This document shows, one piece after another, positions 3,616 to 61,611 of a stretch of DNA of 64,000 nt (positions are counted from its first letter, which is position 1; every line of letters begins with the position of its first letter). The DNA is taken from NCBI GenBank assembly GCA_904063045.1, contig CAJFCJ010000014.1, positions 2,105,643-2,169,642 of the forward strand, in the 5' to 3' direction. A model generated the notes under the pieces. That model saw only the letters and a list, made by a program, of their open reading frames with translations, was not told where the DNA came from and did not search any database. This DNA is from Dimorphilus gyrociliatus. Lineage: Eukaryota > Animalia > Annelida. The translations under genes and the position numbers were made by a program.

Positions 3616-3999
3616 TTACTTAGCGCTGGTGTACTTGGTTACAGCCTTGGTTCCCTCAGAAACGGCGTGCTTAGCCAATTCACCGGGCAACAGAAGTCTT
3701 ACGGCTGTTTGGATTTCTCTGGACGTGATTGTTGATCTTTTGTTGTAATGAGCCAATCTGGAGGCTTCGGCAGCAATTCTTTCGAAGATGTCGTTGACGA
3801 AGGAGTTCATGATAGACATAGCTTTGGATGAGATACCAGTATCTGGATGAACTTGTTTCAAAACTTTGTAGATGTAGATGGCGTAAGATTCCTTCCTCCT
3901 TCTCTTCTTCTTCTTGTCAGTGCTGCGAACAGCTTTGGCCTTCGATGCAGCCTTCTTCGAACCTTTAGATGCGGCTTTTCCACCAACTTTAGGAGGCAT
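3616..3999 (-). CDS. H2B: Histone H2B, canonical replication-dependent type, intronless
   Basis: 127-aa ORF with the H2B core ([41 protein letters not shown]...VTKYTSAK) and a 3' stem-loop at 3559-3574. Confidence 0.99.
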
Positions 4000-48977: not shown

Positions 48978-51716
48978 ATGTCGAGTGGGAGCGCAAACGT
49001 TTCCAGGGTTAGACCTACCGATCCAACATTTATTTCATCTACGCTGCAGTCATCAACAATTGATATAGAACGCGATTCCTGTTTGTTCGGAATAGTTGAA
49101 TACGATGTTATTCCTGCAGCTGCCTGTGCCATTTGCGCAATTTTTGGTCTATTATATACATTCTTCGGTAAGTCTGTTTTATTTTGTATATTGAATAGAG
49201 ATATTAGCCAGGTAATTCAGGTTAAATGTTTCAAAAGTGAAAAAAATCTGAGCTAAACCCGATATAATCGCCGAGTAAGTTTTAATTAACAATTAACCTA
49301 TCTACAATAGAATACTTAACATCTCTTAAAATACAAATAGAATGAGAAAATTGTATATTTTAATAATAAAATAACAATATATACAACAGATTAAAAACTG
49401 GTTTTATTTTAATAGAGGTGGGAATATTAAACAAGGTAGAAAAATATGGCACTGGTTTTTTTTCTCTCTCTTATGCCCCTATACTTTATAGTTGTGTAGT
49501 ATTCCCTATGCAAATATCTATTTTTGGTTTCGTGTCATATATTATACTGGAGGCAAGGAGTGCAGTAGATTTATACGATATTTTTTCTTCTCTTATACAT
49601 CTATTCATGTTTGATTGTATCTCTTTTGATTTACATTTAAAAAAATAATGTTTCCACGAAAATGAAGAAAGATGGATTTTTCTTTGCTTTATTATATATA
49701 ATTAAGCAATAATCTAAGAGATGGTTCTACTAATGAAAGGCCACTTCTATGTATTAAATAGACTAACTAATAACTATAACAAACGAAAAAATGAGAAAAA
49801 AATTTAGATAAATTATCCAGGCCCAAACAAATAGAGGCTTCAAATCGATTTTGTTAAATAGACACAATGATTTTCTCGGGGGAAGCGACAGAGATTCCAA
49901 TATCTCTCAAGGGATTTTTTAAACCACAATGTTATTAGACACTAGCCATTTCCTCCGCCTTATGGATCTTAATAGTGTTTGTGTCTAATTGAAAAAGAGA
50001 TAAGAGCAGCCTCTACTTGCATATATACATGTATATACTGTATATATACGTATGTCAAAGTAATGCATAAAGTTTTTAATCTATGGCTCCTGCTATAATA
50101 ATAATTAGAAAATAACTCGTTATTTTGTTTATAAAGATAATTCAGTAATCTTACAACAAGTACACAATCACTCGTAGTAAGATAATTTCTTTATTAAATG
50201 ATAAAATGGAAAAAACAGCTTAAAATTAATTACCTTTTGATTAAAAAGAGAAAATAATGATATTAAATATCATTAAATTGTTGGTGACAATTCCTGTTTA
50301 AAAAGGAAAATAAATCTTTTTATTGTGCAAAATACGTTTATATAAATTTATTTAGGCTATGTTTTCTGAAATTCTAATCTCTTACCAAAAATAGACAGAT
50401 CTATTAATAGCTTTTATGATTAACAAAAATGGAATAATTAATAATTAAAATTGATATTTACGGACGCTTATTAGCCTTTTGATACCCTATTTAAAAAATA
50501 AAACATACTCTATACATCCATGCACACATAAATGTAAGATAAATAGGTGTCCAACTTATATGTTTTACTCTAAGTTTGATATAAATTGTATTGTTTACAT
50601 TTTCAGGGTATAAATTTTTCAAAGCTGTTATGTTCATTACTGGTCTAATGCTTGGTGGTTCATTAACATGGTTAATATGCAAAAATGCAGAAGCCGAAGT
50701 GCTCGGTAAGAATAATTAAACAATATTTGCTCTAACAAACTAGGGTTTTAAATTTTCTGCTTCAATGAATCCAACTGAAAAAATAGAATGTTTTTGCTAT
50801 TTGCTTTATTTTGTACATACAATGGAAATTTTTTTTCTTTATTTTCTATAAAAATCCTACTTTAGATCCTATTTTTCGTCGTTGTTGTTAAAACGAGATA
50901 TTTCATATCTTACTATATACTATATATTCAGGTACTGGTGGTGCGATAGGGATATCCTTTGCAGCTGGACTAATGACAGGCCTTATAACAATGCTCTTGG
51001 AAATGGTTGGCTTATTTATAACCGGATTCGTATTAGGAGGTCTTTTAGGGATATCAACCTTAGTCAGTATTCTTTATCTAGCTCCCGAGCCTCTATCTAG
51101 ATGGAGCAGTCTCGGCTTAATTCTGGGTATTGGTCTATTGTTTGCTCTTTCTACACTCTATTGGAAAAGAGCTCTGGTCATTGTAGGAACATCAGGAACA
51201 GGAGCTTTTCTCTTAACAATTTCGCTCGATTATTTTGTTGAAGAGTTTAGAGCGGTTAAAATAATACCGGCGGCATTGCACCAATTAAAAGACGATCCAA
51301 AACCTGAACTCTGTTGGATTTCTTGGGTTTTATTAATTTTTTGGCCATTCGCCACACTCATTGGCATAGTGATTCAATTTCGTGTAACTTCAAAGACAAA
51401 AAAAGAAAGATCGACTGTTGTGCGTGGAAGAAAGCAGAAAAGAATAACTGTAAAATCGGCTAGAGTTTACAGACCCACAAATCCCGCCCGCAGCCATAGG
51501 CCTATGCAGCCCGTTGCCAGACAGCAACAACAACAGCAGCAGCAACCTCCTTACAACAATTCAGGAGGGTCCGCTAACAGATACAGACAATTATATCAAG
51601 TTAGGAGGTTTAATGGAGACGTGATTAGTCAATGCGGTATAGAAAATATTAGACACGAATTATCACCTGCTATGAGAACAGTCTTAGAAAGATCTAGGTC
51701 TGTCAGTCAAGCATAA
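48978..51716 (+). CDS. TMEM198: Transmembrane protein 198
   Basis: Exons 48978-49167, 50607-50705, 50932-51716. Motifs CAIFGLLYTFFGYKFFKAVMFITGL, ISLDYFVE, LCWISWVLLIFWPFATLIGIVIQFRVT; polyQ in the tail. Confidence 0.92.
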
Positions 51717-53490: not shown

Positions 53491-55662
53491 ATGGGGAATT
53501 CTCCTCGAAGAAATGAAATTACTCGTAAGTTTTATTCAATGAATTAGATAATCAGTATAACATCTTATTAATAAACAGCTTGTACGGATGATAAATGGTC
53601 GAATAGAAGGAGAAAAGAGAGTTTTAAGATAGTTTTAATAGGTAAAGAAAGAGTATACTACGTAGGTAAAACTGTATAGACTTATCAACAAATTTCTCTC
53701 AATAGGCGATAGCGAAGTTGGAAAGACATGTGTCTATCTAAGATATTTAAAGAATCAGTTTTCCACAGAATATCATCATTCTTATCAAATGAATATGGGT
53801 AATACAAAATTATTATGAAAACTCTTGAATTATTCTCTTATTCTTCTCTAGAAAATGTAACGCATAAAGTCGACCTTGATAAGAATATCACTTGTGGTTT
53901 AACTATTCTCGATATCCCAGCCAAGGAGGATATCGATCTTAGAGACACATATTATAGAAATGCTGATGCAGCTATAGGTTAACATTCTATATAACGTTTT
54001 ATTAAAAACATTATTTTTTTATTACTGATTTCTAATAAATCAACAGTCGTAGTAGATCTCACTGATAGAACAAGTATAGAGATGGCTGGTACTTGGAAAC
54101 AAGACTTTTGTAAAAGAGTAACGAAAGTTATCTATAAACGTTCTAAAGACAAGAATGGTCAGGAGAGAATCGTTTCCGAATATATACCAACGAATGGTTA
54201 TAATATGCCTGTCTTACTTCTTGGAAATAAGTTTGATATTGTTAATATTTACACAAGTTAATAATATAAAAGAAAAAACTATTGTTAATAGAAAACGCTT
54301 GTTTTTAATCAATAAATCAATAGATTCAAGATCAGATGGAAGAAGAATTCAAGGATGATTCGAATAATCATTCAGCCTATAATAAAATTTGTCAAGATTT
54401 AAGCCTTGAAGAGAATTTAGATAAAAGTAAAGAAAACAATGATTTACTTTATCCTTTCTTCTAATTATTTTCTCTTGTAAAAAGAACTTGAATTTAGCGA
54501 AAATTCGGAGAACGAAGACGAGGATAGAAATGATGTTATAGTAGATGATTCTTCTTTGGGAAAGAAAAAAAAATTCAAGAAACCTCCTTGCGTTAAACTC
54601 TTAGAGCACGTTGGAGAAGAATTCGACTTTATTTCAAGGTAGAAGGAAGAAGACAATTATAAACAACTATATAGCCCTACTACTATTTATTTTTTATAGT
54701 ATTGCAGCATCCGCCAAGCATAGTACATCGTCTAAAGCATTTCATCTAATATTAAAAAAATTGCTAGAATTGAACGGATACAAAGAAACAGAAGAGAAAT
54801 CAACAGATGAAAATACCAAAAATGATAACGAAACTGAAGAAATCGAAGAGGAATTTTTCGGAATGCAAAAATGTGATATAGAAGAAGTAAGTCATAAAGT
54901 ATTTAATGCGTTAAATGTCGAACGATTTAATATTATAGGTAGACGCCTTAGTTGTTGCCTCTGTTTCATCAATTTCAAAAGTAGAAGATTTATATACATT
55001 CTACAATTTAGCTGAGAAGAAAATGAAACAAATTTTCAATGATATCGATATTATTGAAGATATACATTGCAGCTTAGAAGATTGCGTCTATGGTCTTAGG
55101 CGTTCCGTTTTTAATTCAATAAAGAAAGAACTACAAATTCTACCCTTCGAAGAGTTTGTTCGACTTGTCTACGAGGATAGCGAAGAAGAGACGGACGACG
55201 ACGAAGAAGAGGTTTGTTCTTACAAAATAGTCTTTTCCTTCTATAAACTCGTTTGACGCGTAGATCACTAGAATTAGGAGGAAGTTACCGAGAGGAGTAC
55301 CGGAAGCTTTAGATACATTCAATGCGGAGGTAATTTGTCTTACTCTCTTCGTGATTAATAACAAGTTCACTTTCTTCAATATTCAGTATAGCACAGTATG
55401 CAGTCACATAATTAAACAATCTCCTAATTTACTAAGGAAATTAGAAAATTTAGACGCCTATTTCGAGGGTAAATCGGCGAATGCATACGATATCACACCG
55501 CTTAGAGAAGATGGCCAACCGGACGTTAAAAAAGTTCACGGTGTTAAGAAGATTTGCGAAACAAATCGAGCCAGATTAAAGCATTATATAAGAATGTTAC
55601 AACAATTATGCGAGTTAATAAGAAATTGTAAAGAAAAAGTGAATCTGGCCTTACTTTGGTAG
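53491..55662 (+). CDS. Atypical Rab-like small GTPase domain (Rab32/38/29-like features) with acidic insertion and long C-terminal extension
   Basis: Spliced MGNSPRRNEITPCTDDKW...FKIVLIGDSEVGKT, LDIPAKE, YYRNADAAIVVVDLT, WKQD, LLLGNKFD, AASAK, then about 230 aa of acidic/helical sequence. The 3' end is uncertain: a donor near 55640 may add another exon. Confidence 0.8.
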
Positions 55663-56188
55663 GAATTGAATATTCAATTAAATCATATACTTGATGAAAA
55701 GTTACAGTGTGCTATTTCTATTTACGTATTATTCTTTCTTCTACCTCTCTATAATGTATATTGTTTGTGATAATGACAAGTAATCCTCGACTTCCTGTAT
55801 CGTTCCTTAGCCATAGGAGCTTATGCATGTCCACTATTGGGCCTTTAATGTATTGTTCGAATATTTCTTGTCTTCTTGAGAAATAGAGGTGGACAACCAC
55901 AATTAACAAACCATCAAAAATGCTGATTGCTTGTATTTTTTTTTTTTTGGTAAAAAAAACTGTTGAAACTTACAAGATACTAACTTTCCATGTCACTATA
56001 AACATAGAGACAGAATAACGAAAATAAAAATTTTCACAAGCACAACAAACACAAGCACACTTATTACTACTTTTTTTTTTAATAATGTTAGTAGAAAATG
56101 TATGGTTTACTGAATAGACGAGATCTAATATATAACATTGAAATAAATCCATCAATGTTGGATTTTAACACTTTTTTTCTGTGAAAAG

Positions 56189-58400
56189 TTAACTGGTCTC
56201 ATCTTTCTCTTCTTCGTCATCTTTTTCTTTTTCGTTCTTCTTGGCTGCGGCTTTACCTTTATTCTTCCCAGCTTTTGGTTTTCTTCCACGTTTAAGGAAT
56301 TCTTTGCCTTCCTTGGCCGTTTTCTGCATAGTTCCCTCCTTTTTCAACTCGGCTTTTTTAGCGGGTGCTTTTGCCTTTGCTTTCTTGGGTGGAGCTTCAG
56401 CTTTTTCGGGCGCTGGAGGACGTTTACGCAGTTGACGACCTAAACATAGCAGTTAAAAGTTGTTGAAAGTTCAATCGCAAAATTAAAAAGTAGTTGTATA
56501 ATTTAAGACAAAAAAATTTCGCAAAATGGTTTAATCAGAAAGCTATAATAGGGTAGCTAGTTATCTTTATTAGCAAAGAAAAATTATTAAACTTCTCTTC
56601 AACTGAACCCTTCGTAAATTGTAACCTGGGTGTAACCTAAAATAAAATCAGAAATTCAACTAAATCGATAAAGCTTCTGCAAAAAATCAATGAAGTATAG
56701 AAATAATCCAATTTTAAAGCGAAATTGAAACGTGTTAAGAAGTAATAATTCAACTACTGAGAATTAGTTGTTACAAAATTTTAGAAATGTGAAGCCAACC
56801 TCCTGACAAATCCAAATCCTTTCCAACAAGGGCTTTAGCTTCCGCAGCAGTTTTAGCCATGGATGACATTTTCTTAGGGGCTCCCTTTTTTTTAGTGCCT
56901 TTTTTCTCACCCTTAATATCTTCAATTTTCTTTTGCTGCCCTCTTGTATGGGCATCTTCATCTGGACGGCCTGCAGAATCCAGAAGGGCATTTCCTTCCT
57001 GTTTCAAGAAAATGATGTAAAATTAGTTTTAGTTTTTTCAAATAAAGTGGGAATTATCATATGCAAATAAGAAAAAGCATACAAAATTTTTTAAGAAAAC
57101 GAAACACAGAACAAAAAAAATAAACAATCAGTGTGCGTGAAAGATAAAAAAACAGCAGAAATGAATTAAGAAATTGTGAACAGAAGGGATATTTTTTATT
57201 TTTGTACTGGAGAAAGCAAAGAAACCTTTGCGGTTGCTTTCATAGTTCCCTGTTTCGCCATTTTGGCTTTTTTCCCGACTTTTTTGTCGTCCATTAGGTA
57301 GGGTTTCTTCCATTCGGTCAGATTTTTTTCCAGGAAGGCTTTTCCTTCCTATTTTTATGAAACAATATTTTTTAAAAAATACATAATTGAACTAATAGCT
57401 TAGTGCGTCATAAAAAAAACCTTCAGCGAAAAAAATAGGTGATTTGCTAAGAAAATATTAAAAATTATCAATATAATATAAAAATCTATATAAAAAATGA
57501 AAACAATCGTATTTGTGCCATGTTTACACGGTTACAAAAGAGCAACAGCGTAAATAGACTCTTTTGGAAAAGTTACGTAACAATGGAATACAACTTATCA
57601 ATGAGGACGTTTTAAAGTACTTTATCCCTTTTTTTTGCATGTTTCACTAACTAAACACCTGTTCGTATATTTTTTAAATATAAAAACAACGAACTCAACT
57701 ATATACCAGCGACTATTATACGGAAAATCGATCACATAGTAATTTAGGCCTATTAAAAAATGAATGACAATAAGCTATTAATGCAAATGAAAACAAGTTC
57801 CCCGATTAGTGCTCTTTTTAAAAATAAAGTCTGTTGAATAAAACTCATAATATAAAAACGCTCAAAATGCAAAATCTTTTGATTTTTAAAAGAGGCAAAA
57901 ATTTAACGGTTTTTTCAAATATGGTTTAAAATCAACGCAACGCAAACTCTCTGAATATGCAGAATAAATCGAACATTTTATCGATTACAAATACTTAGTT
58001 AAAATACAATTTTTCATATTTATACCCCTAGTTTTTTTTTTGATTACCGATAAGAGGTCAGATATAACAGCTCTTTGCCTCCATTTGTAACGTAAATGGC
58101 ACGATTTGTAGAAACATATAATAGTGTTCACGGTGTAAACAAAAGAACATTCTACGGCGGGAACGCTTTCAAAGACACTAATTTGGTTGATTGAAGCAGA
58201 TATCAAAATAAATTAGTATTCTTTTGATGAATACTTCTAATTGGTTTCGTAACGACATTATTTACATGTAAATATGAGCCAAAAATTCATTGATCACTAA
58301 TGTCCAGCTATTTATACTAATTTTATAATGTTAAAAATATATTTACCTTAGCTGTAGCTACCATTGTCCCTGCACGGCTTAATTCGGCTTTATCACTCAT
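56189..58400 (-). CDS. Uncharacterised 208-aa Lys-rich protein with four ~21-aa repeats
   Basis: Exons 58347-58400, 57226-57348, 56800-56998 and 56189-56439 join in frame with GT-AG. Repeat consensus K-A-x-L-x-[RK]-x-G-T-M-x-x-T-A-K-E-G-K-x-F-L. Confidence 0.88.
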
Positions 58401-58498
58401 TTTGATCGTTGTTTTTGAGTGAAAATGTCGAAATTTAATAGATATATTGAGCGAAATTAACAGATAGTTTCCGCGATGGCGACCGGCGTATAGCGTGC

Positions 58499-58558
58499 CC
58501 ACGTGACCTTAACTGTAAAATATGATTGGTGTAGAGAATTTCAAACTTTATGACGTCA
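58499..58558 (-). promoter_or_regulatory. Promoter cluster upstream of the Lys-rich gene (E-box, CCAAT, full CRE)
   Basis: CACGTG 58500-58505, ATTGG 58525-58529 and TGACGTCA 58551-58558 lie in a locally GC-richer patch 100-160 bp upstream of the ATG. Confidence 0.55.
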
Positions 58559-60447
58559 CGGGCTATATTTCGACTCTCTTTTTTTCTAGAAAAGGGCTAC
58601 CATTTTTTTAAAAAAGCATAACAAATACACTTTTCACGCTTTTCACGCATTCTTATTCGCAAACAAACGTTTAAGCGGGCTTTAAGTAATGAAATATTGA
58701 ATAGTTCTTTGTTTCAATTGTTTACATCCTAACAGAAAAGTTTTTTGTTTATGAAAACCGGAAACGGAAATCAAATTTGAAAAAAATCTGTTGTTTGAAA
58801 TACTGTTAAAGAGAGCGTTCATTGGAAATAAAACAATATTAGCAAATACCATATTGTAGATAACGTAAACGTTCAAACAGTAGCCTGAAAATGCCATTTT
58901 AAGAAATGAAAAAGATAAAAACCGTAGTTATTTATTTCAAACTTTCCTAAATTTTATCAGACGACTAGTAGTAATATGTTAATTATATAATATTTGTTAG
59001 ATAGTGAAGAGTCTATATTTTTTCAAATATTAATAACAAAATATTAAATGCATGTATATTTTATTATTTTCGTTCAAAACATGAAAAGATTGACCTACTT
59101 TATTGAAAATTTAAAAATAGACTTCTTGAGCACCTGTAGCAATAAATTATAATAACGTATATAACAAAAATTTCATAATTGTTATTTTACGTTATCAATG
59201 ATCTAAGACTAAGGAATTAAATAATAATTGAAATGTCATTGTGATTCAAGAAGCTTTGACAAAAAATAAGCAACGGTTGAAAAACTGAAAATGTAACATT
59301 TTGTGAGCGAGTTGGCCTCTTGCATTCTCGTCAACTGCATTTATAAAGTTGAATATATGATATATATATATATATATATCTTTATTGAAGAGTTAATACC
59401 TGAAAAATTAATATTTAATAGTAACGTTTTTTAACGTAGAAAATATAGGCTTACCTTTTCAATAGAAGTAGATTCAATCATCATCATCTTTTGAATAACG
59501 CTTGAAAATGATACTTAATGATTGAAATTTTATGAAAAAATTGTCTTTTTTTACTTTTTTTTCTTGTTATTATAAGATTATTGAATGTATTGCAAAAAGG
59601 TAGAAAGAAGAATAATAGCAGAGAGAATTATTCTATGGTTAATATATAATTAATAAAAGACTGTATGTTGCAAAATATTTTAGGTTGTATTTATTTTATA
59701 TATATTAATTTAATTACAGTATTAACTAATAATATCACACCAAATATATTAGAGCAATAGGACATTGGCTATTTACAAATTTCGCAAGCAATAGGTGAAA
59801 AAAAATAATGTAATAGCTGGATATGTACATGAATTTCTCAAGCCACAATACAAAAATTGAGTATACAGTAAAATAATTTGACTTTTTTTTTCTTTTTTGT
59901 TTAGATCTTATTGATTTTACATTTGAATATCATACTTAATATTAAATAAGCCAAGTGAGCAAATGTAGTACAAAAGCATTCAATATTAATTATAAAGGTT
60001 ATACATGTAATATACAATATATACTTATTAATGTTTAGTTTGTAAATTACATATATATGCTAATAGATGTGCTATTGTTACTTTTTTTATTTACCATTAA
60101 TTTAAGCTGGTGAATTAAGGTGAAAAAAACATTGAAAATAAGAAATCAATTCAGTATATTTTCGTGGAAAGCGCAAACGGTGATTTTTGTAGGATAATTA
60201 TATTACTTTTACCTTTATTTTTATTACCTTGCATAATGTTTTTAGGTTGTTAGATTCATCCTCTGTTTTATATAATGGAATTTCGGTATAGGTTGGTGGG
60301 ATAAGGGGAAAGAGAGAAAAAAAAAGAAAAAAAGACAAAAATTATCTTTCATGTAAAATTCATATTATTTTTCTTAAAGATATGTAACCGTTGCTGAATT
60401 TACAATTTCAATTGCTGAATCCTGTATTAAATTCCATTGTGGGGTAA

Positions 60448-61611
60448 TCATGCAATACTTGATACTAGAACAGTGGTACTTACAACAATTTGAGTGTCCT
60501 TTTTAGGTTCCTTCTCGTCATTTCTTGAATTTTTCTCGCTCTCTATATCTTTCTTTTTAGCTTTATCTAGTTCCTTCTCAGCTTTCATTTTTTCGAGTAA
60601 TTCTTCCCTCTTTTTACGTCTGATCTCTTCGTGTATTTTCCTTTTGATATCAAACACTAACTCAGGATTGTTCAATAAAGTATAACATTTCCACCATCTA
60701 AATTTTATTTGGTTTCTCTTCAATTGAACTTCTTCATCGACGGCTAAAGGTGCTGCATTTTCAGGATGATCACCAATGCTACCGTTTACGGTTCTGTCAT
60801 CTCTGCTATTTAACTTATCTATAAGCATGTAACAGAAAAATCTTAAGATTGGATGGTTATGATAAAGCTCTAGATAAAGCATTCTTAGATAGGCGTTGTG
60901 ACCCGTGTCCAATTTTTCAAACCCTCTCATCAATAGGCATCTATCTGTTCTACTAATTAAAAGTGCGCCAAAAACGACAGAAAAAACGATTCTCTTGAGG
61001 CAGCCAAATACACCAATAATGACATTAAAGAAGAAAAGAAAGAATGAAATGACGTGAAAAACTCTTCGGTTATTAATAGCCAAAAACCTTCCTTTTTCTT
61101 GCAGAAATGCTAATCTGGCCAGTACTAATTGCAGAATATTTAAAATGATGCTGACCAAGACGCTTGGCCTATATATATTGGAATATGAAATAACAATTGT
61201 TTAATAAATCAATGATAGCTTACCATAAAGAGAGTAAAATTTTTATCAGCCAGTTGACATGACCCTTTAATAGAGGTCTGATAAATAGCAGAATGACAAT
61301 AGATAAGACGACTGTAATAAGTATCATAACCAATGTGAAGCCCCAGAAGAGATAAGCTATTTGATAGCCCGCATATTTAAATGCCGATACAACTGTCGAA
61401 TCCGGAGATGGGAGAGATTTTCCCATAAAATTTTTTCTTCCCTTATAAAGTTTAGCAATGTGAATCCTTAAAAAAAGAAATTATTATATAACTTAATTAT
61501 ATTAAAGATAAACAAAATATTACTTGTAGGCTATAGCCATATGAATACAAAACAAAATATGAAGCATCAATGATAGATAAATACCAGTTAGGAAGCAGCC
61601 TGTTAATTTAC

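What the first reader, a model, noticed from the sequence alone, without database searches (positions are those of the whole stretch)
56189..58400. Hidden 208-aa Lys-rich protein built from four copies of an unrecognised ~21-aa motif, with introns at the same repeat position
Seen: the spliced product is MSDKAELSRAGTMVATAK|EGKAFLEKNLTEWKKPYLMDDKKVGKKAKMAKQGTMKATAK|EGNALLDSAGRPDEDAHTRGQQKKIEDIKGEKKGTKKKGAPKKMSSMAKTAAEAKALVGKDLDLSG|GRQLRKRPPAPEKAEAPPKKAKAKAPAKKAELKKEGTMQKTAKEGKEFLKRGRKPKAGKNKGKAAAKKNEKEKDDEEEKDETS, with 51 Lys. The repeats are KAELSRAGTMVATAKEGKAFL, KAKMAKQGTMKATAKEGNALL, KGAPKKMSSMAKTAAEAKALV and KAELKKEGTMQKTAKEGKEFL. Introns 1 and 2 are both phase 0 at TAK|EG, implying tandem exon duplication. 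Linkers have H1-tail-like PAKK, an AT-hook-like KRGRKP, RQLRKR, TRGQ and an acidic tail. Established: L-x-R/K-x-x-T-hydrophobic is the CaMKII/PKD/Chk1/AMPK-type phospho-consensus. Inference: a multivalent, phospho-switchable chromatin or cytoskeletal protein (H1/HMGN-like) whose repeat is a short amphipathic binding helix. I do not recognise a named family.
Basis: partly seen in the sequence, partly recalled or inferred. Interest (0 to 1): 0.75.

Follow-up and report, generated by a model that had tools for sequence, protein, structure and literature searches.

The report
Unnamed ancient Lys-rich repeat protein
This is a real four-exon gene of the small annelid Dimorphilus gyrociliatus for a lysine-rich, mostly disordered protein built from a conserved 21-residue helical motif; it belongs to an old animal-wide family that nobody has named or studied, and the public gene model lacks one of its exons.

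Summary
Four minus-strand exons with canonical GT-AG introns give 208 residues with 51 Lys. Introns 1 and 2 are both phase 0 at TAK|EG.

- **Organism and gene.** The genome is Dimorphilus gyrociliatus. The gene is already public as DgyrCDS10177 (167 aa, uncharacterised). That model is 100% identical to exons 1, 3 and 4 and omits the 41-codon exon 2.
- **Exon 2 is real.** Orthologue transcripts carry its equivalent at the same place, and the family profile hits it in the genome. Other orthologue transcripts and chelicerate isoforms lack it, so it is probably an alternative cassette.
- **The motif.** Its consensus is K-P-x-L-x-[RK]-x-G-T-M-x-x-T-A-K-E-G-x-x-[FL]-L. It defines a family in sponges, cnidarians, molluscs, annelids, nemerteans, brachiopods, rotifers, a priapulid, a tardigrade and chelicerates. 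A chytrid and an amoebozoan also carry it.
- **No name.** No Pfam, PDB or literature match was found.
- **Exon = repeat.** A bivalve genomic contig has four consecutive phase-0 introns at TAK|E[GA], so one exon encodes one repeat unit.
- **Structure.** AlphaFold2 gives no fold, only isolated helices that start at the invariant Thr.
- **Function (inferred).** Some orthologues have a canonical AT-hook where this protein has RGRKP. With a bipartite NLS pattern and an acidic tail, this favours a nuclear, chromatin-associated multivalent protein.

The parts
58347..58400 (-). Exon 1: start codon and the N-terminal half of motif 1 (KAELSRAGTMVATAK at 58347-58391). It ends at TAK| with a strong GTAAAT donor.
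   Evidence: It is 100% identical to residues 1-18 of DgyrCDS10177 (P0092).
57349..58346 (-). Intron 1: 998 nt, phase 0, GT-AG. This is far longer than the genome's median intron of 66 bp.
   Evidence: The median comes from PMC7854359. No Rfam RNA lies inside it.
57226..57348 (-). Exon 2: a 123-nt, phase 0-0 cassette missing from the public model. It encodes the C-half of motif 1 (EGKAFL), the Trp-containing module KNLTEWKKPYLM, a basic linker and the N-half of motif 2 (57226-57270). Its acceptor tract is A-rich and its donor is GTTTCT.
   Evidence: It is about 50% identical to orthologues at the same position (E 5e-14 to 7e-13). The family profile hits it in the genome at profile positions 19-61 (E 4e-5). 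Orthologue transcripts exist with it (P0080, L007) and without it (P0085, L006).
56999..57225 (-). Intron 2: 227 nt, phase 0, at the same motif position (TAK|EG) as intron 1.
56800..56998 (-). Exon 3: the C-half of motif 2 (EGNALL), the RPDEDAHTRGQQKKIEDIK module (56912-56968), motif 3 in its divergent form (KGAPKKMSSMAKTAAEAKALV, 56825-56887), and DLDLSG plus the first base of a Gly codon.
   Evidence: It is 100% identical to P0092 residues 19-84. Profile hit E 1.4e-10.
56440..56799 (-). Intron 3: 360 nt, phase 1, GT-AG.
   Evidence: the split codon is GGT.
56189..56439 (-). Exon 4 coding part. It holds GRQLRKR and a bipartite-NLS-like stretch, RKR then 11 residues then KKAKAK (56369-56428). 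Motif 4, KAELKKEGTMQKTAKEGKEFL (56294-56356), is the best-conserved copy. The degenerate AT-hook KRGRKPK lies at 56273-56293 and the acidic tail at 56192-56233. The stop is at 56189-56191.
   Evidence: It is 100% identical to P0092 residues 86-167. Orthologues have a canonical RGRP at the KRGRKPK position.
58500..58558 (-). Putative core promoter region 100-160 nt upstream of the ATG: CACGTG (58500-58505), CCAAT (58525-58529) and TGACGTCA (58551-58558).
   Evidence: These are pattern matches only; function was not tested.
56078..56083 (-). ATTAAA polyadenylation-signal variant, about 105 nt downstream of the stop codon.
   Evidence: This is a pattern match only.

Best explanation
**Shown**
- This is the single-copy Dimorphilus gyrociliatus gene DgyrCDS10177.
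- It is the orthologue of an unnamed, ancient family of about 150-320-aa Lys-rich disordered proteins.
- Each family member carries 3-6 copies of the 21-residue motif K-P-x-L-x-[RK]-x-G-T-M-x-x-T-A-K-E-G-x-x-[FL]-L.
- The gene is built exon-per-repeat. Phase-0 introns cut the motif at TAK|EG, so an internal exon carries the C-half of one motif, a linker module and the N-half of the next.
- Exon 2 is such a symmetric 123-nt exon. It is missing from the public model. Including it gives the 208-aa architecture seen in orthologues.

**Likely**
- Exon 2 is an alternatively spliced cassette. Skipping it rejoins TAK to EG and leaves an intact hybrid motif, removing one repeat and the only Trp-containing module.

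**Inferred**
- Each motif is a pre-formed amphipathic helix of about 15 residues, capped by the invariant Thr. Its face of M, A, G/A and F/L docks on a conserved partner.
- The protein is nuclear and chromatin-associated. Basic linkers and a degenerate AT-hook would hold DNA while the 3-4 helices give multivalent binding. The acidic tail would moderate this, as in HMG-type proteins.
- The conserved hydrophobic-x-[RK]-x-x-T-M context could let a basophilic kinase switch each helix.
For: **Gene model and identity:**

**Exon 2 is genuine**
- Exon 2 matches orthologues at the same position with E 5e-14 to 7e-13.
- The A1 profile contains the Dimorphilus protein only without exon 2, yet it hits exon 2 in the genome at E 4e-5. 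It finds no other locus in the 78-Mb assembly.

**Cassette behaviour**
- P0080 versus P0085, and L007 versus L006, differ by exactly the exon-2 equivalent.
- In the Limulus pair (X1 P0143, X2 P0247) and the Centruroides-cluster pair (X1 P0240 and the shorter, unnamed Logan-derived member P0151), the shorter form lacks a segment that starts right after T-x-K of motif 1.

**Exon = repeat**
- Bivalve-like contig L008 has exons ending ...TAK|gt and starting ag|E[GA] four times in a row. One of them is also 123 nt.

**Family breadth**
- The word search gave 92 hits.
- The profile search gave 347 clusters at E <= 1e-3 and 118 at E <= 1e-10.
- Source names cover Porifera, Cnidaria, Mollusca, Annelida, Nemertea, Brachiopoda, Rotifera, Priapulida, Tardigrada, Chelicerata, a chytrid and Mastigamoeba.

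**Motif statistics:**

**Helices without a fold**
- pTM is 0.21 and 0.20, and the helices begin at the motif Thr.

**Chromatin lean**
- Canonical RGRP AT-hook cores occur in priapulid, brachiopod, chelicerate and annelid-like orthologues at or next to the position of RGRKP.
- The RKR-11 residues-KKAKAK stretch fits the classical bipartite NLS pattern (read from the sequence).
- Acidic tails occur in 43 of 154 members.
Against: - No experiment or expression data were available, so localisation, partner, DNA binding and phosphorylation are all inferred.
- Dimorphilus itself has RGRKP, not the RGRP core that defines an AT-hook. Only a minority of members have a canonical hook.
- K-rich composition with an acidic tail also fits nucleolar, ribosome-associated, microtubule-associated or generic protective disordered proteins.
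- Alternative splicing in Dimorphilus itself is not shown. The 167-aa public model could simply be an annotation miss.
- Cassette evidence from other species partly compares related species, not one gene.
- The chytrid and amoebozoan hits could be convergence or contamination.
Confidence: 0.55

Rival explanations
1. It is a cytoskeletal regulator. The repeats would act like WH2 or beta-thymosin modules (an amphipathic helix followed by a basic LK[KR] stretch), each binding an actin or tubulin subunit. The protein would sequester or nucleate filaments, as ciboulot or tetrathymosin do.
For: - It is a small disordered protein with 3-6 short amphipathic helices.
- Hydrophobic positions at +1, +5 and +11/12, a conserved Gly at +8, and often a following basic stretch loosely recall the WH2 pattern as I remember it.
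- Conservation beyond animals would suit a partner as conserved as actin or tubulin.
Against: - No WH2 or Thymosin Pfam match in any of 59 members, even at E <= 10.
- The invariant residues (T, M, T, A, E, G) are not those of WH2.
- Only the last repeat is followed by a basic LKR stretch.
- Canonical AT-hooks in orthologues and an NLS-like stretch point to the nucleus.
Confidence: 0.1
2. It is a nucleolar or RNA-associated basic protein, acting as a ribosome-biogenesis or RNA chaperone in the style of nucleolin/Nopp140 tails or SERBP1. The basic stretches would bind RNA and the helices would bind a ribosomal or RNP component.
For: - Lys-rich with acidic runs.
- Automatic names such as 'nucleolin-like' and 'eIF3 subunit-like' were given by pipelines on composition.
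- It is a single-copy gene with a CRE/E-box/CCAAT promoter context.
- As I recall from the literature, extended AT-hook-like elements can bind RNA.
Against: - No RRM, GAR or other RNA-binding domain, and no Pfam hit.
- The names are compositional artefacts.
- No snoRNA or other Rfam RNA lies in the long introns.
Confidence: 0.15
3. It is a generic protective 'hero'/LEA-like disordered protein whose repeats matter only for bulk physicochemical properties.
For: - It is highly charged with no fold.
- The family is present in desiccation-tolerant rotifers and tardigrades.
Against: - Position-specific conservation of about 12 of 21 residues, from sponges to chelicerates and possibly beyond animals, is far more than bulk properties need.
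- The linker modules (PDEDAxTRGQQ, GEKLGDTRQETK, EGRxxR) are also conserved in order.
- The gene is single-copy, unlike expanded stress families.
Confidence: 0.05
4. Exon 2 is not used in Dimorphilus. The 167-aa public model would be the only product, and the exon-2 reading frame a decaying relic.
For: - The public annotation used transcript evidence (PASA/EVM) and omits exon 2.
- Exon 2 has a weak acceptor tract and a weak GTTTCT donor.
Against: - The frame is open for exactly 41 codons between an AG and a GT.
- It scores 17.8 and 28.4 bits for the two half-motifs, with 0 of 5000 shuffles as good.
- It keeps the KNLTEWKKPYLM module about 50% identical to orthologues.
- It is found by the family profile.
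- A relic would be expected to have accumulated stops or frameshifts.
Confidence: 0.1

Closest known systems
HMGA proteins (AT-hook proteins with an acidic tail, e.g. HMGA1/2, C. elegans hmg-12, Drosophila D1)
   Same: Both are small, disordered, basic proteins with an acidic C-terminal tail. Several orthologues (priapulid, brachiopod, chelicerate, annelid-like L007) carry a canonical R-G-R-P hook next to the last motif. Dimorphilus has KRGRKPK followed by GKNKGK at that place.
   Different: The defining feature here is the 21-residue T-M-x-x-T-A-K-E-G helix motif, which HMGA proteins do not have. Dimorphilus lacks the GRP core, and there is at most one hook rather than three. No Pfam match was found.
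HMGN proteins (nucleosome-binding domain RRSARLSA, vertebrates)
   Same: The length, Lys-rich composition and acidic tail are similar. One conserved Arg-rich module per protein (EGR-x-x-R-[SK] followed by K-P-x-P) recalls an arginine-anchor nucleosome-binding motif. That resemblance is from memory and is only a lead.
   Different: No hit to Pfam HMG14_17 in any of 59 members. The motif sequence differs, the repeats are absent from HMGN, and the family was not seen in vertebrates.
Multi-repeat WH2/beta-thymosin proteins (ciboulot, tetrathymosin)
   Same: Both are small disordered proteins made of several short amphipathic helices. Repeat number varies between species and isoforms.
   Different: The conserved residues are different, there is no Pfam WH2 or Thymosin hit, and AT-hooks and an NLS-like stretch are present.
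Histone H1 C-terminal tail
   Same: Both have PAKK/KKAK-type Lys/Ala/Pro-rich stretches.
   Different: There is no H1/H5 globular winged-helix domain (no Pfam hit). The Lys-rich stretches are linkers between specific conserved modules.

Membership tests
Unnamed 'GTM-TAKEG repeat' family (orthologues of DgyrCDS10177) | Two or more copies of the motif K-P-x-L-x-[RK]-x-G-T-M-x-x-T-A-K-E-G-x-x-[FL]-L | tested here: met
   There are four copies. The matrix was built without Dimorphilus, and all copies beat the shuffles (logo).
Unnamed 'GTM-TAKEG repeat' family (orthologues of DgyrCDS10177) | Conserved order of linker modules: N-terminal motif, Trp module, PDEDAxTRGQQ, divergent motif with EAK, GRxxR, last motif followed by a basic hook and an acidic tail | tested here: met
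   Alignment A1 and the exon-by-exon BLAST. The GEKLGDTRQETK repeat unit is absent in Dimorphilus, as it is in P0080 and P0073.
Unnamed 'GTM-TAKEG repeat' family (orthologues of DgyrCDS10177) | Phase-0 introns at TAK|E[GA] inside the motif | tested here: met
   Dimorphilus introns 1 and 2. Bivalve-like L008 introns 1-4. Chelicerate isoform boundaries are compatible.
HMGA / AT-hook proteins | Canonical AT-hook core R-G-R-P flanked by basic residues | tested here: not met
   The Dimorphilus sequence is KRGRKPK. The canonical core is present only in some orthologues.
HMGN | Match to the HMG14_17 family model or an RRSARLSA nucleosome-binding core | tested here: not met
   No Pfam hit at E <= 10 for the exons or for 59 family members. 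No RRSARLSA is present.
Histone H1 | Linker-histone globular winged-helix domain | tested here: not met
   No Pfam hit. AlphaFold2 shows no globular domain.
WH2 / beta-thymosin | Match to the WH2 or Thymosin family models (LLxxIxxGxxLKKV-type helix plus LKKT/V) | tested here: not met
   No hit in 59 members at E <= 10. HMMER's filters may hide very weak matches to such short models.
Substrate of basophilic CaMK-group, PKD or Chk1-type kinases | Phosphorylation of the motif Thr in the hydrophobic-x-[RK]-x-x-T context | not testable with these tools
   The sequence context is conserved: -5 is L/M/V/I in 86%, -3 is R/K in 98%, position 0 is T in 97% and +1 is M in 89%. No phosphorylation data were available.

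The most novel reading that the evidence does not exclude
The 21-residue motif is an undescribed, possibly pre-metazoan helical docking module for one universally conserved eukaryotic partner, such as a histone or nucleosome surface. It is present from an amoebozoan and a chytrid to sponges, cnidarians, spiralians and basal ecdysozoans, but was not seen here in any vertebrate, insect or nematode, which would explain why it was never studied. Its genes are built one exon per repeat, with the intron inside the motif. Exon skipping or duplication therefore changes valency without ever breaking a motif. Inclusion of the Trp-containing first cassette would be an alternative-splicing event conserved between annelids and chelicerates.
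Probability: 0.25. Interest if true: 0.75.

Novelty: new variant of a known kind. Interest (0 to 1): 0.55.

Why it matters
- The motif gives a clean, testable definition (motif, module order, intron position) for a conserved family that has no Pfam model and no paper, only compositional auto-names such as 'nucleolin-like' and 'late histone H1'.
- None of the hits that carry a source name is from a vertebrate, an insect or a nematode, although the family runs from sponges to horseshoe crabs. That makes it a typical blind spot of functional genomics.
- The exon-per-repeat design with the intron inside the motif is a neat example of how exon duplication and cassette skipping can tune the number of binding helices.
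- It corrects a public gene model, which is missing a 41-codon exon.
- If the chromatin reading holds, it would add an invertebrate architectural chromatin protein comparable in role to HMGA or HMGN.

Tried and rejected
**Searches that found nothing**
- Pfam on exons 2-4, on P0014, on 10 distant members and on all 59 members of A1 gave nothing recurrent.
- A PDB sequence-profile search gave nothing below E 0.2.
- Foldseek of the P0071 model against the PDB gave no match, as expected for a model without a fold.
- The ESM Atlas gave no usable hit for exon 4 or for P0071.
- Rfam on 55500-59500, run to test whether the long introns host snoRNAs, gave nothing.
- Paper searches by motif strings, by gene identifiers and by descriptive words gave nothing relevant.
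- A paralogue search in the own genome gave none.

**Leads dropped**
- An early guess from an earlier scan note (a CHH-like peptide nearby) that the genome was ecdysozoan was dropped once P0092 identified Dimorphilus.
- The synuclein KTKEGV resemblance was considered and dropped. The spacing differs and there was no PDB or Pfam hit.
- LEM/SAP/HeH helix-loop-helix resemblance of the longer ancestral unit (motif helix, then G-x-E-x-L-G, then T-R-x-Q-T) was considered. No Pfam hit supports it.

- The joined 208-aa product was never used in any search, fold or script. Exons were searched one by one by reference, and full-length comparisons used database proteins.
- The contig is not human.
Full report
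**1. The observation**

The pieces are:
- exon 1, 58400..58347, 18 aa;
- exon 2, 57348..57226, 41 aa;
- exon 3, 56998..56800, 66 codons plus one base;
- exon 4, 56439..56189, 82 codons after the split Gly codon, then TAA.

All introns are GT-AG. Introns 1 (998 nt) and 2 (227 nt) are phase 0 and both cut T-A-K|E-G. Intron 3 (360 nt) is phase 1. Counted exon by exon, the product has 208 residues, 51 Lys and a net charge of about +26. The window is AT-rich animal DNA from a 78-Mb assembly.

Each exon was searched by reference, and full-length comparisons used proteins returned by the databases.

**2. Whose gene it is**

A word search with exon 4 returned short ORF fragments from other eukaryotic contigs. 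They share a strikingly conserved last exon of the form ...GR-x-x-RS...LKKAGTMQKTAKEGKEFLKRGRKPKK followed by an acidic tail. One cluster member, P0014 (266 aa, on a 1.5-kb contig), is a full-length relative with six to seven motif copies. Searching with it gave 92 proteins.

Among them, P0092 is DgyrCDS10177 of Dimorphilus gyrociliatus (167 aa, uncharacterised). It is 100% identical to exon 1, exon 3 and exon 4. So the organism is this miniature annelid, whose genome was described as 73.8 Mb in PMC7854359. The gene is public, and the public model joins exon 1 directly to exon 3.

**3. Exon 2**

Three lines of evidence show that exon 2 is a true coding exon.
- It is about 50% identical to annelid-like orthologues (P0065, P0075, P0084; also P0071 and P0068), with E 5e-14 to 7e-13. 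The match lies at exactly the same place, directly after the first 18-19 residues.
- Its two half-motifs score 17.8 and 28.4 bits against a matrix built from other species. None of 5000 shuffles did as well.
- The profile of alignment A1 contains the Dimorphilus protein only without exon 2. It still finds exon 2 in a six-frame search of the whole genome (profile positions 19-61, E 4e-5). It finds nothing outside this gene.

Messages lacking precisely this segment also exist in relatives.
- P0085 and the metatranscriptome contig L006 go from TAK straight to EA..LL, whereas P0080 and L007 contain the cassette.
- NCBI isoform X2 of a Limulus gene (P0247, versus X1 P0143) drops a Trp-containing segment that begins right after T-x-K of motif 1. 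So does P0151, a shorter Logan-derived member of the cluster that holds Centruroides isoform X1 (P0240).
- Exon 2 has the weakest splice signals of the gene: an A-rich acceptor tract and a GTTTCT donor.

My reading is that exon 2 is a conserved alternative cassette and that both the 167-aa and 208-aa products are likely real. Only junction reads from Dimorphilus RNA-seq can settle this.

**4. The motif and the family**

I collected 510 unique instances from 158 proteins of 150 aa or more. The consensus is K-P-x-L-x-[RK]-x-G-T-M-x-x-T-A-K-E-G-x-x-[FL]-L. Positions that my search pattern left free are strongly conserved:

| Position | Residue(s) | Share |
|---|---|---|
| -8 | K | 70% |
| -7 | P/A | 69% |
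| -5 | L/M/V/I | 86% |
| -3 | R/K | 98% |
| +11 | hydrophobic (L/F/I/Y/V) | 94% |
| +12 | L | 78% |

The stretches after each motif are themselves conserved modules in a fixed order:
- a Trp module (KNLT[DE]WKKP);
- PDEDAxTRGQQKxI;
- GEKLGDTRQETK, which is absent in Dimorphilus;
- a divergent motif containing EAK;
- EGR-x-x-R-[KS];
- the last motif, followed by a basic hook and an acidic tail.

In sponge and cnidarian members the unit is longer and more regular. The motif is followed by LLGGE-x-L-x-x-TR-x-QT.

A profile search of 1.84 billion cluster representatives found 347 clusters at E <= 1e-3 and 118 at E <= 1e-10. The names attached by sources place members in these groups:
- Porifera (Halichondria);
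- Cnidaria (Nematostella, Pocillopora, Sanderia);
- Mollusca (many);
- Annelida (Owenia, Dimorphilus);
- Nemertea, Brachiopoda and Rotifera;
- Priapulida and Tardigrada;
- Chelicerata (Limulus, Tachypleus, Centruroides);
- a chytrid, Cladochytrium (E 8e-13, six copies);
- the amoebozoan Mastigamoeba (E 1e-14, five near-perfect copies fused to a TerD domain).

None of the hits that carry a source name is from a vertebrate, an insect or a nematode. That is not proof of absence, because only the best 150 hits are listed and most lack names.

Every source name is either 'uncharacterized/hypothetical' or an obvious compositional auto-name: nucleolin-like, late histone H1, eIF3 subunit, ABC-F member, and so on. 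No Pfam family recurs in 59 members even at E <= 10. No PDB sequence matched. No paper contains the motif strings or the gene identifiers I tried.

**5. Gene architecture**

A 9.7-kb marine-metagenome contig, L008, carries the complete orthologue in six exons. It is closest to Mactra, Mya and Mercenaria proteins. Exons 1-4 all end ...T-A-K|gt, and exons 2-5 all begin ag|E-[GA]. That makes four consecutive phase-0 introns at the very position of Dimorphilus introns 1 and 2. Its second exon is also 123 nt.

Each internal exon thus encodes the C-half of one motif, a linker module and the N-half of the next motif. This has three consequences.
The intron position is shared by annelid and bivalve and is compatible with the chelicerate isoform boundaries.
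- It explains why repeat number varies from 3 to 7 between species.
- Skipping any such exon keeps the frame and recreates an intact hybrid motif.

The bivalve's fifth intron is phase 1, in the Ala codon of E-E^A-K. It is not shared with Dimorphilus, whose third intron sits after DLDLSG.

**6. Structure**

AlphaFold2 was run with the family alignment on P0092 and on the full-architecture orthologue P0071. It gives pTM 0.21 and 0.20, meaning no tertiary fold. Local confidence is 70-89 for isolated helices. Every motif helix starts at the invariant Thr of T-M and runs for about 15 residues. A second short helix starts at the Thr of T-R-G-Q. On the motif helix, M(+1), A(+5), G/A(+8) and F/L(+11/12) fall on one face.

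I infer a pre-formed amphipathic docking helix with a Thr N-cap and small residues at the centre of the interface.

**7. Function (inferred)**

Four things point to the nucleus and DNA.
- Canonical R-G-R-P AT-hook cores occur in the priapulid (P0171), brachiopod (P0076), chelicerate (P0151, P0179, P0208, P0240) and annelid-like (L007, GRGRGRPKK directly after the last motif) orthologues. They sit where Dimorphilus has KRGRKPK.
- The RKR-11 residues-KKAKAK stretch fits the classical bipartite NLS pattern.
- Acidic tails resemble those of HMG-type proteins.
- There is one Arg-rich EGR-x-x-R module per protein.

I therefore favour a nuclear, chromatin-associated, multivalent disordered protein. 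I put this at about 0.45-0.5 for the function. Gene identity, family membership and the exon-2 conclusion stand at about 0.9.

Phosphorylation was not testable. The rivals are a cytoskeletal WH2-like binder, a nucleolar or RNA-associated protein, a generic protective disordered protein, and 'exon 2 unused'. They are listed with their tests in the Rival explanations section.

**8. Comparison with known families, and novelty**

By composition and hook it works most like HMGA or HMGN-type architectural proteins. It fails the membership tests for HMGA (no GRP core here), HMGN, H1 and WH2/thymosin (no model match, different conserved residues).

What is new:
- the motif family itself, which is unnamed and has no Pfam model;
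- its exon-per-repeat structure with the intron inside the motif;
- the missing cassette exon in the public model.

What is not new is the gene's existence.

**9. Limits**

- No expression data were reachable.
- The contig is not human.
- No step needed referral.

Noticed in passing
window 56440-58346: All three introns of this gene (998, 227 and 360 nt) are far longer than the species' median of 66 bp. The genome paper notes that unusually long introns tend to carry open-chromatin peaks. They may hold regulatory elements or splicing-control elements for the cassette. No Rfam RNA was found in them.
   Followed up: partly
window 3616-3999 (-): An intronless 127-aa ORF that reads as a canonical histone H2B, with a Lys-rich N-tail and the conserved histone fold sequence.
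   Followed up: no
P0165 (Mastigamoeba balamuthi, EukProt): Five near-perfect copies of the motif (R-A-G-T-M-E-V-T-A-Q-E-G-K-E-F-V) are fused to a C-terminal TerD domain (Pfam E 1e-7). This is the only domain fusion seen in the family. Its meaning is unknown, and contamination or convergence is not excluded.
   Followed up: partly
L008:5123-5990: In the bivalve-like orthologue the intron before the last exon is phase 1, inside the Ala codon of E-E^A-K of the divergent motif. The many 60-90-aa 'proteins' in the databases (P0002-P0009, P0098) are prokaryote-style ORF calls that start inside that intron.
   Followed up: yes
window 60448-61158 (-): The next ORF upstream on the same strand is 236 aa. 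It has hydrophobic segments and a Lys/Glu-rich C-terminal tail. It was not examined.
   Followed up: no
window 50973-51716 (+): A 247-aa ORF with several hydrophobic segments, followed by a basic stretch and a poly-Gln run. It was not examined.
   Followed up: no
Limulus and Tachypleus proteins P0143, P0208, P0251-P0258: Horseshoe crabs carry at least four paralogous genes of the family, each with isoforms. This is consistent with their known whole-genome duplications. Dimorphilus has one copy.
   Followed up: partly
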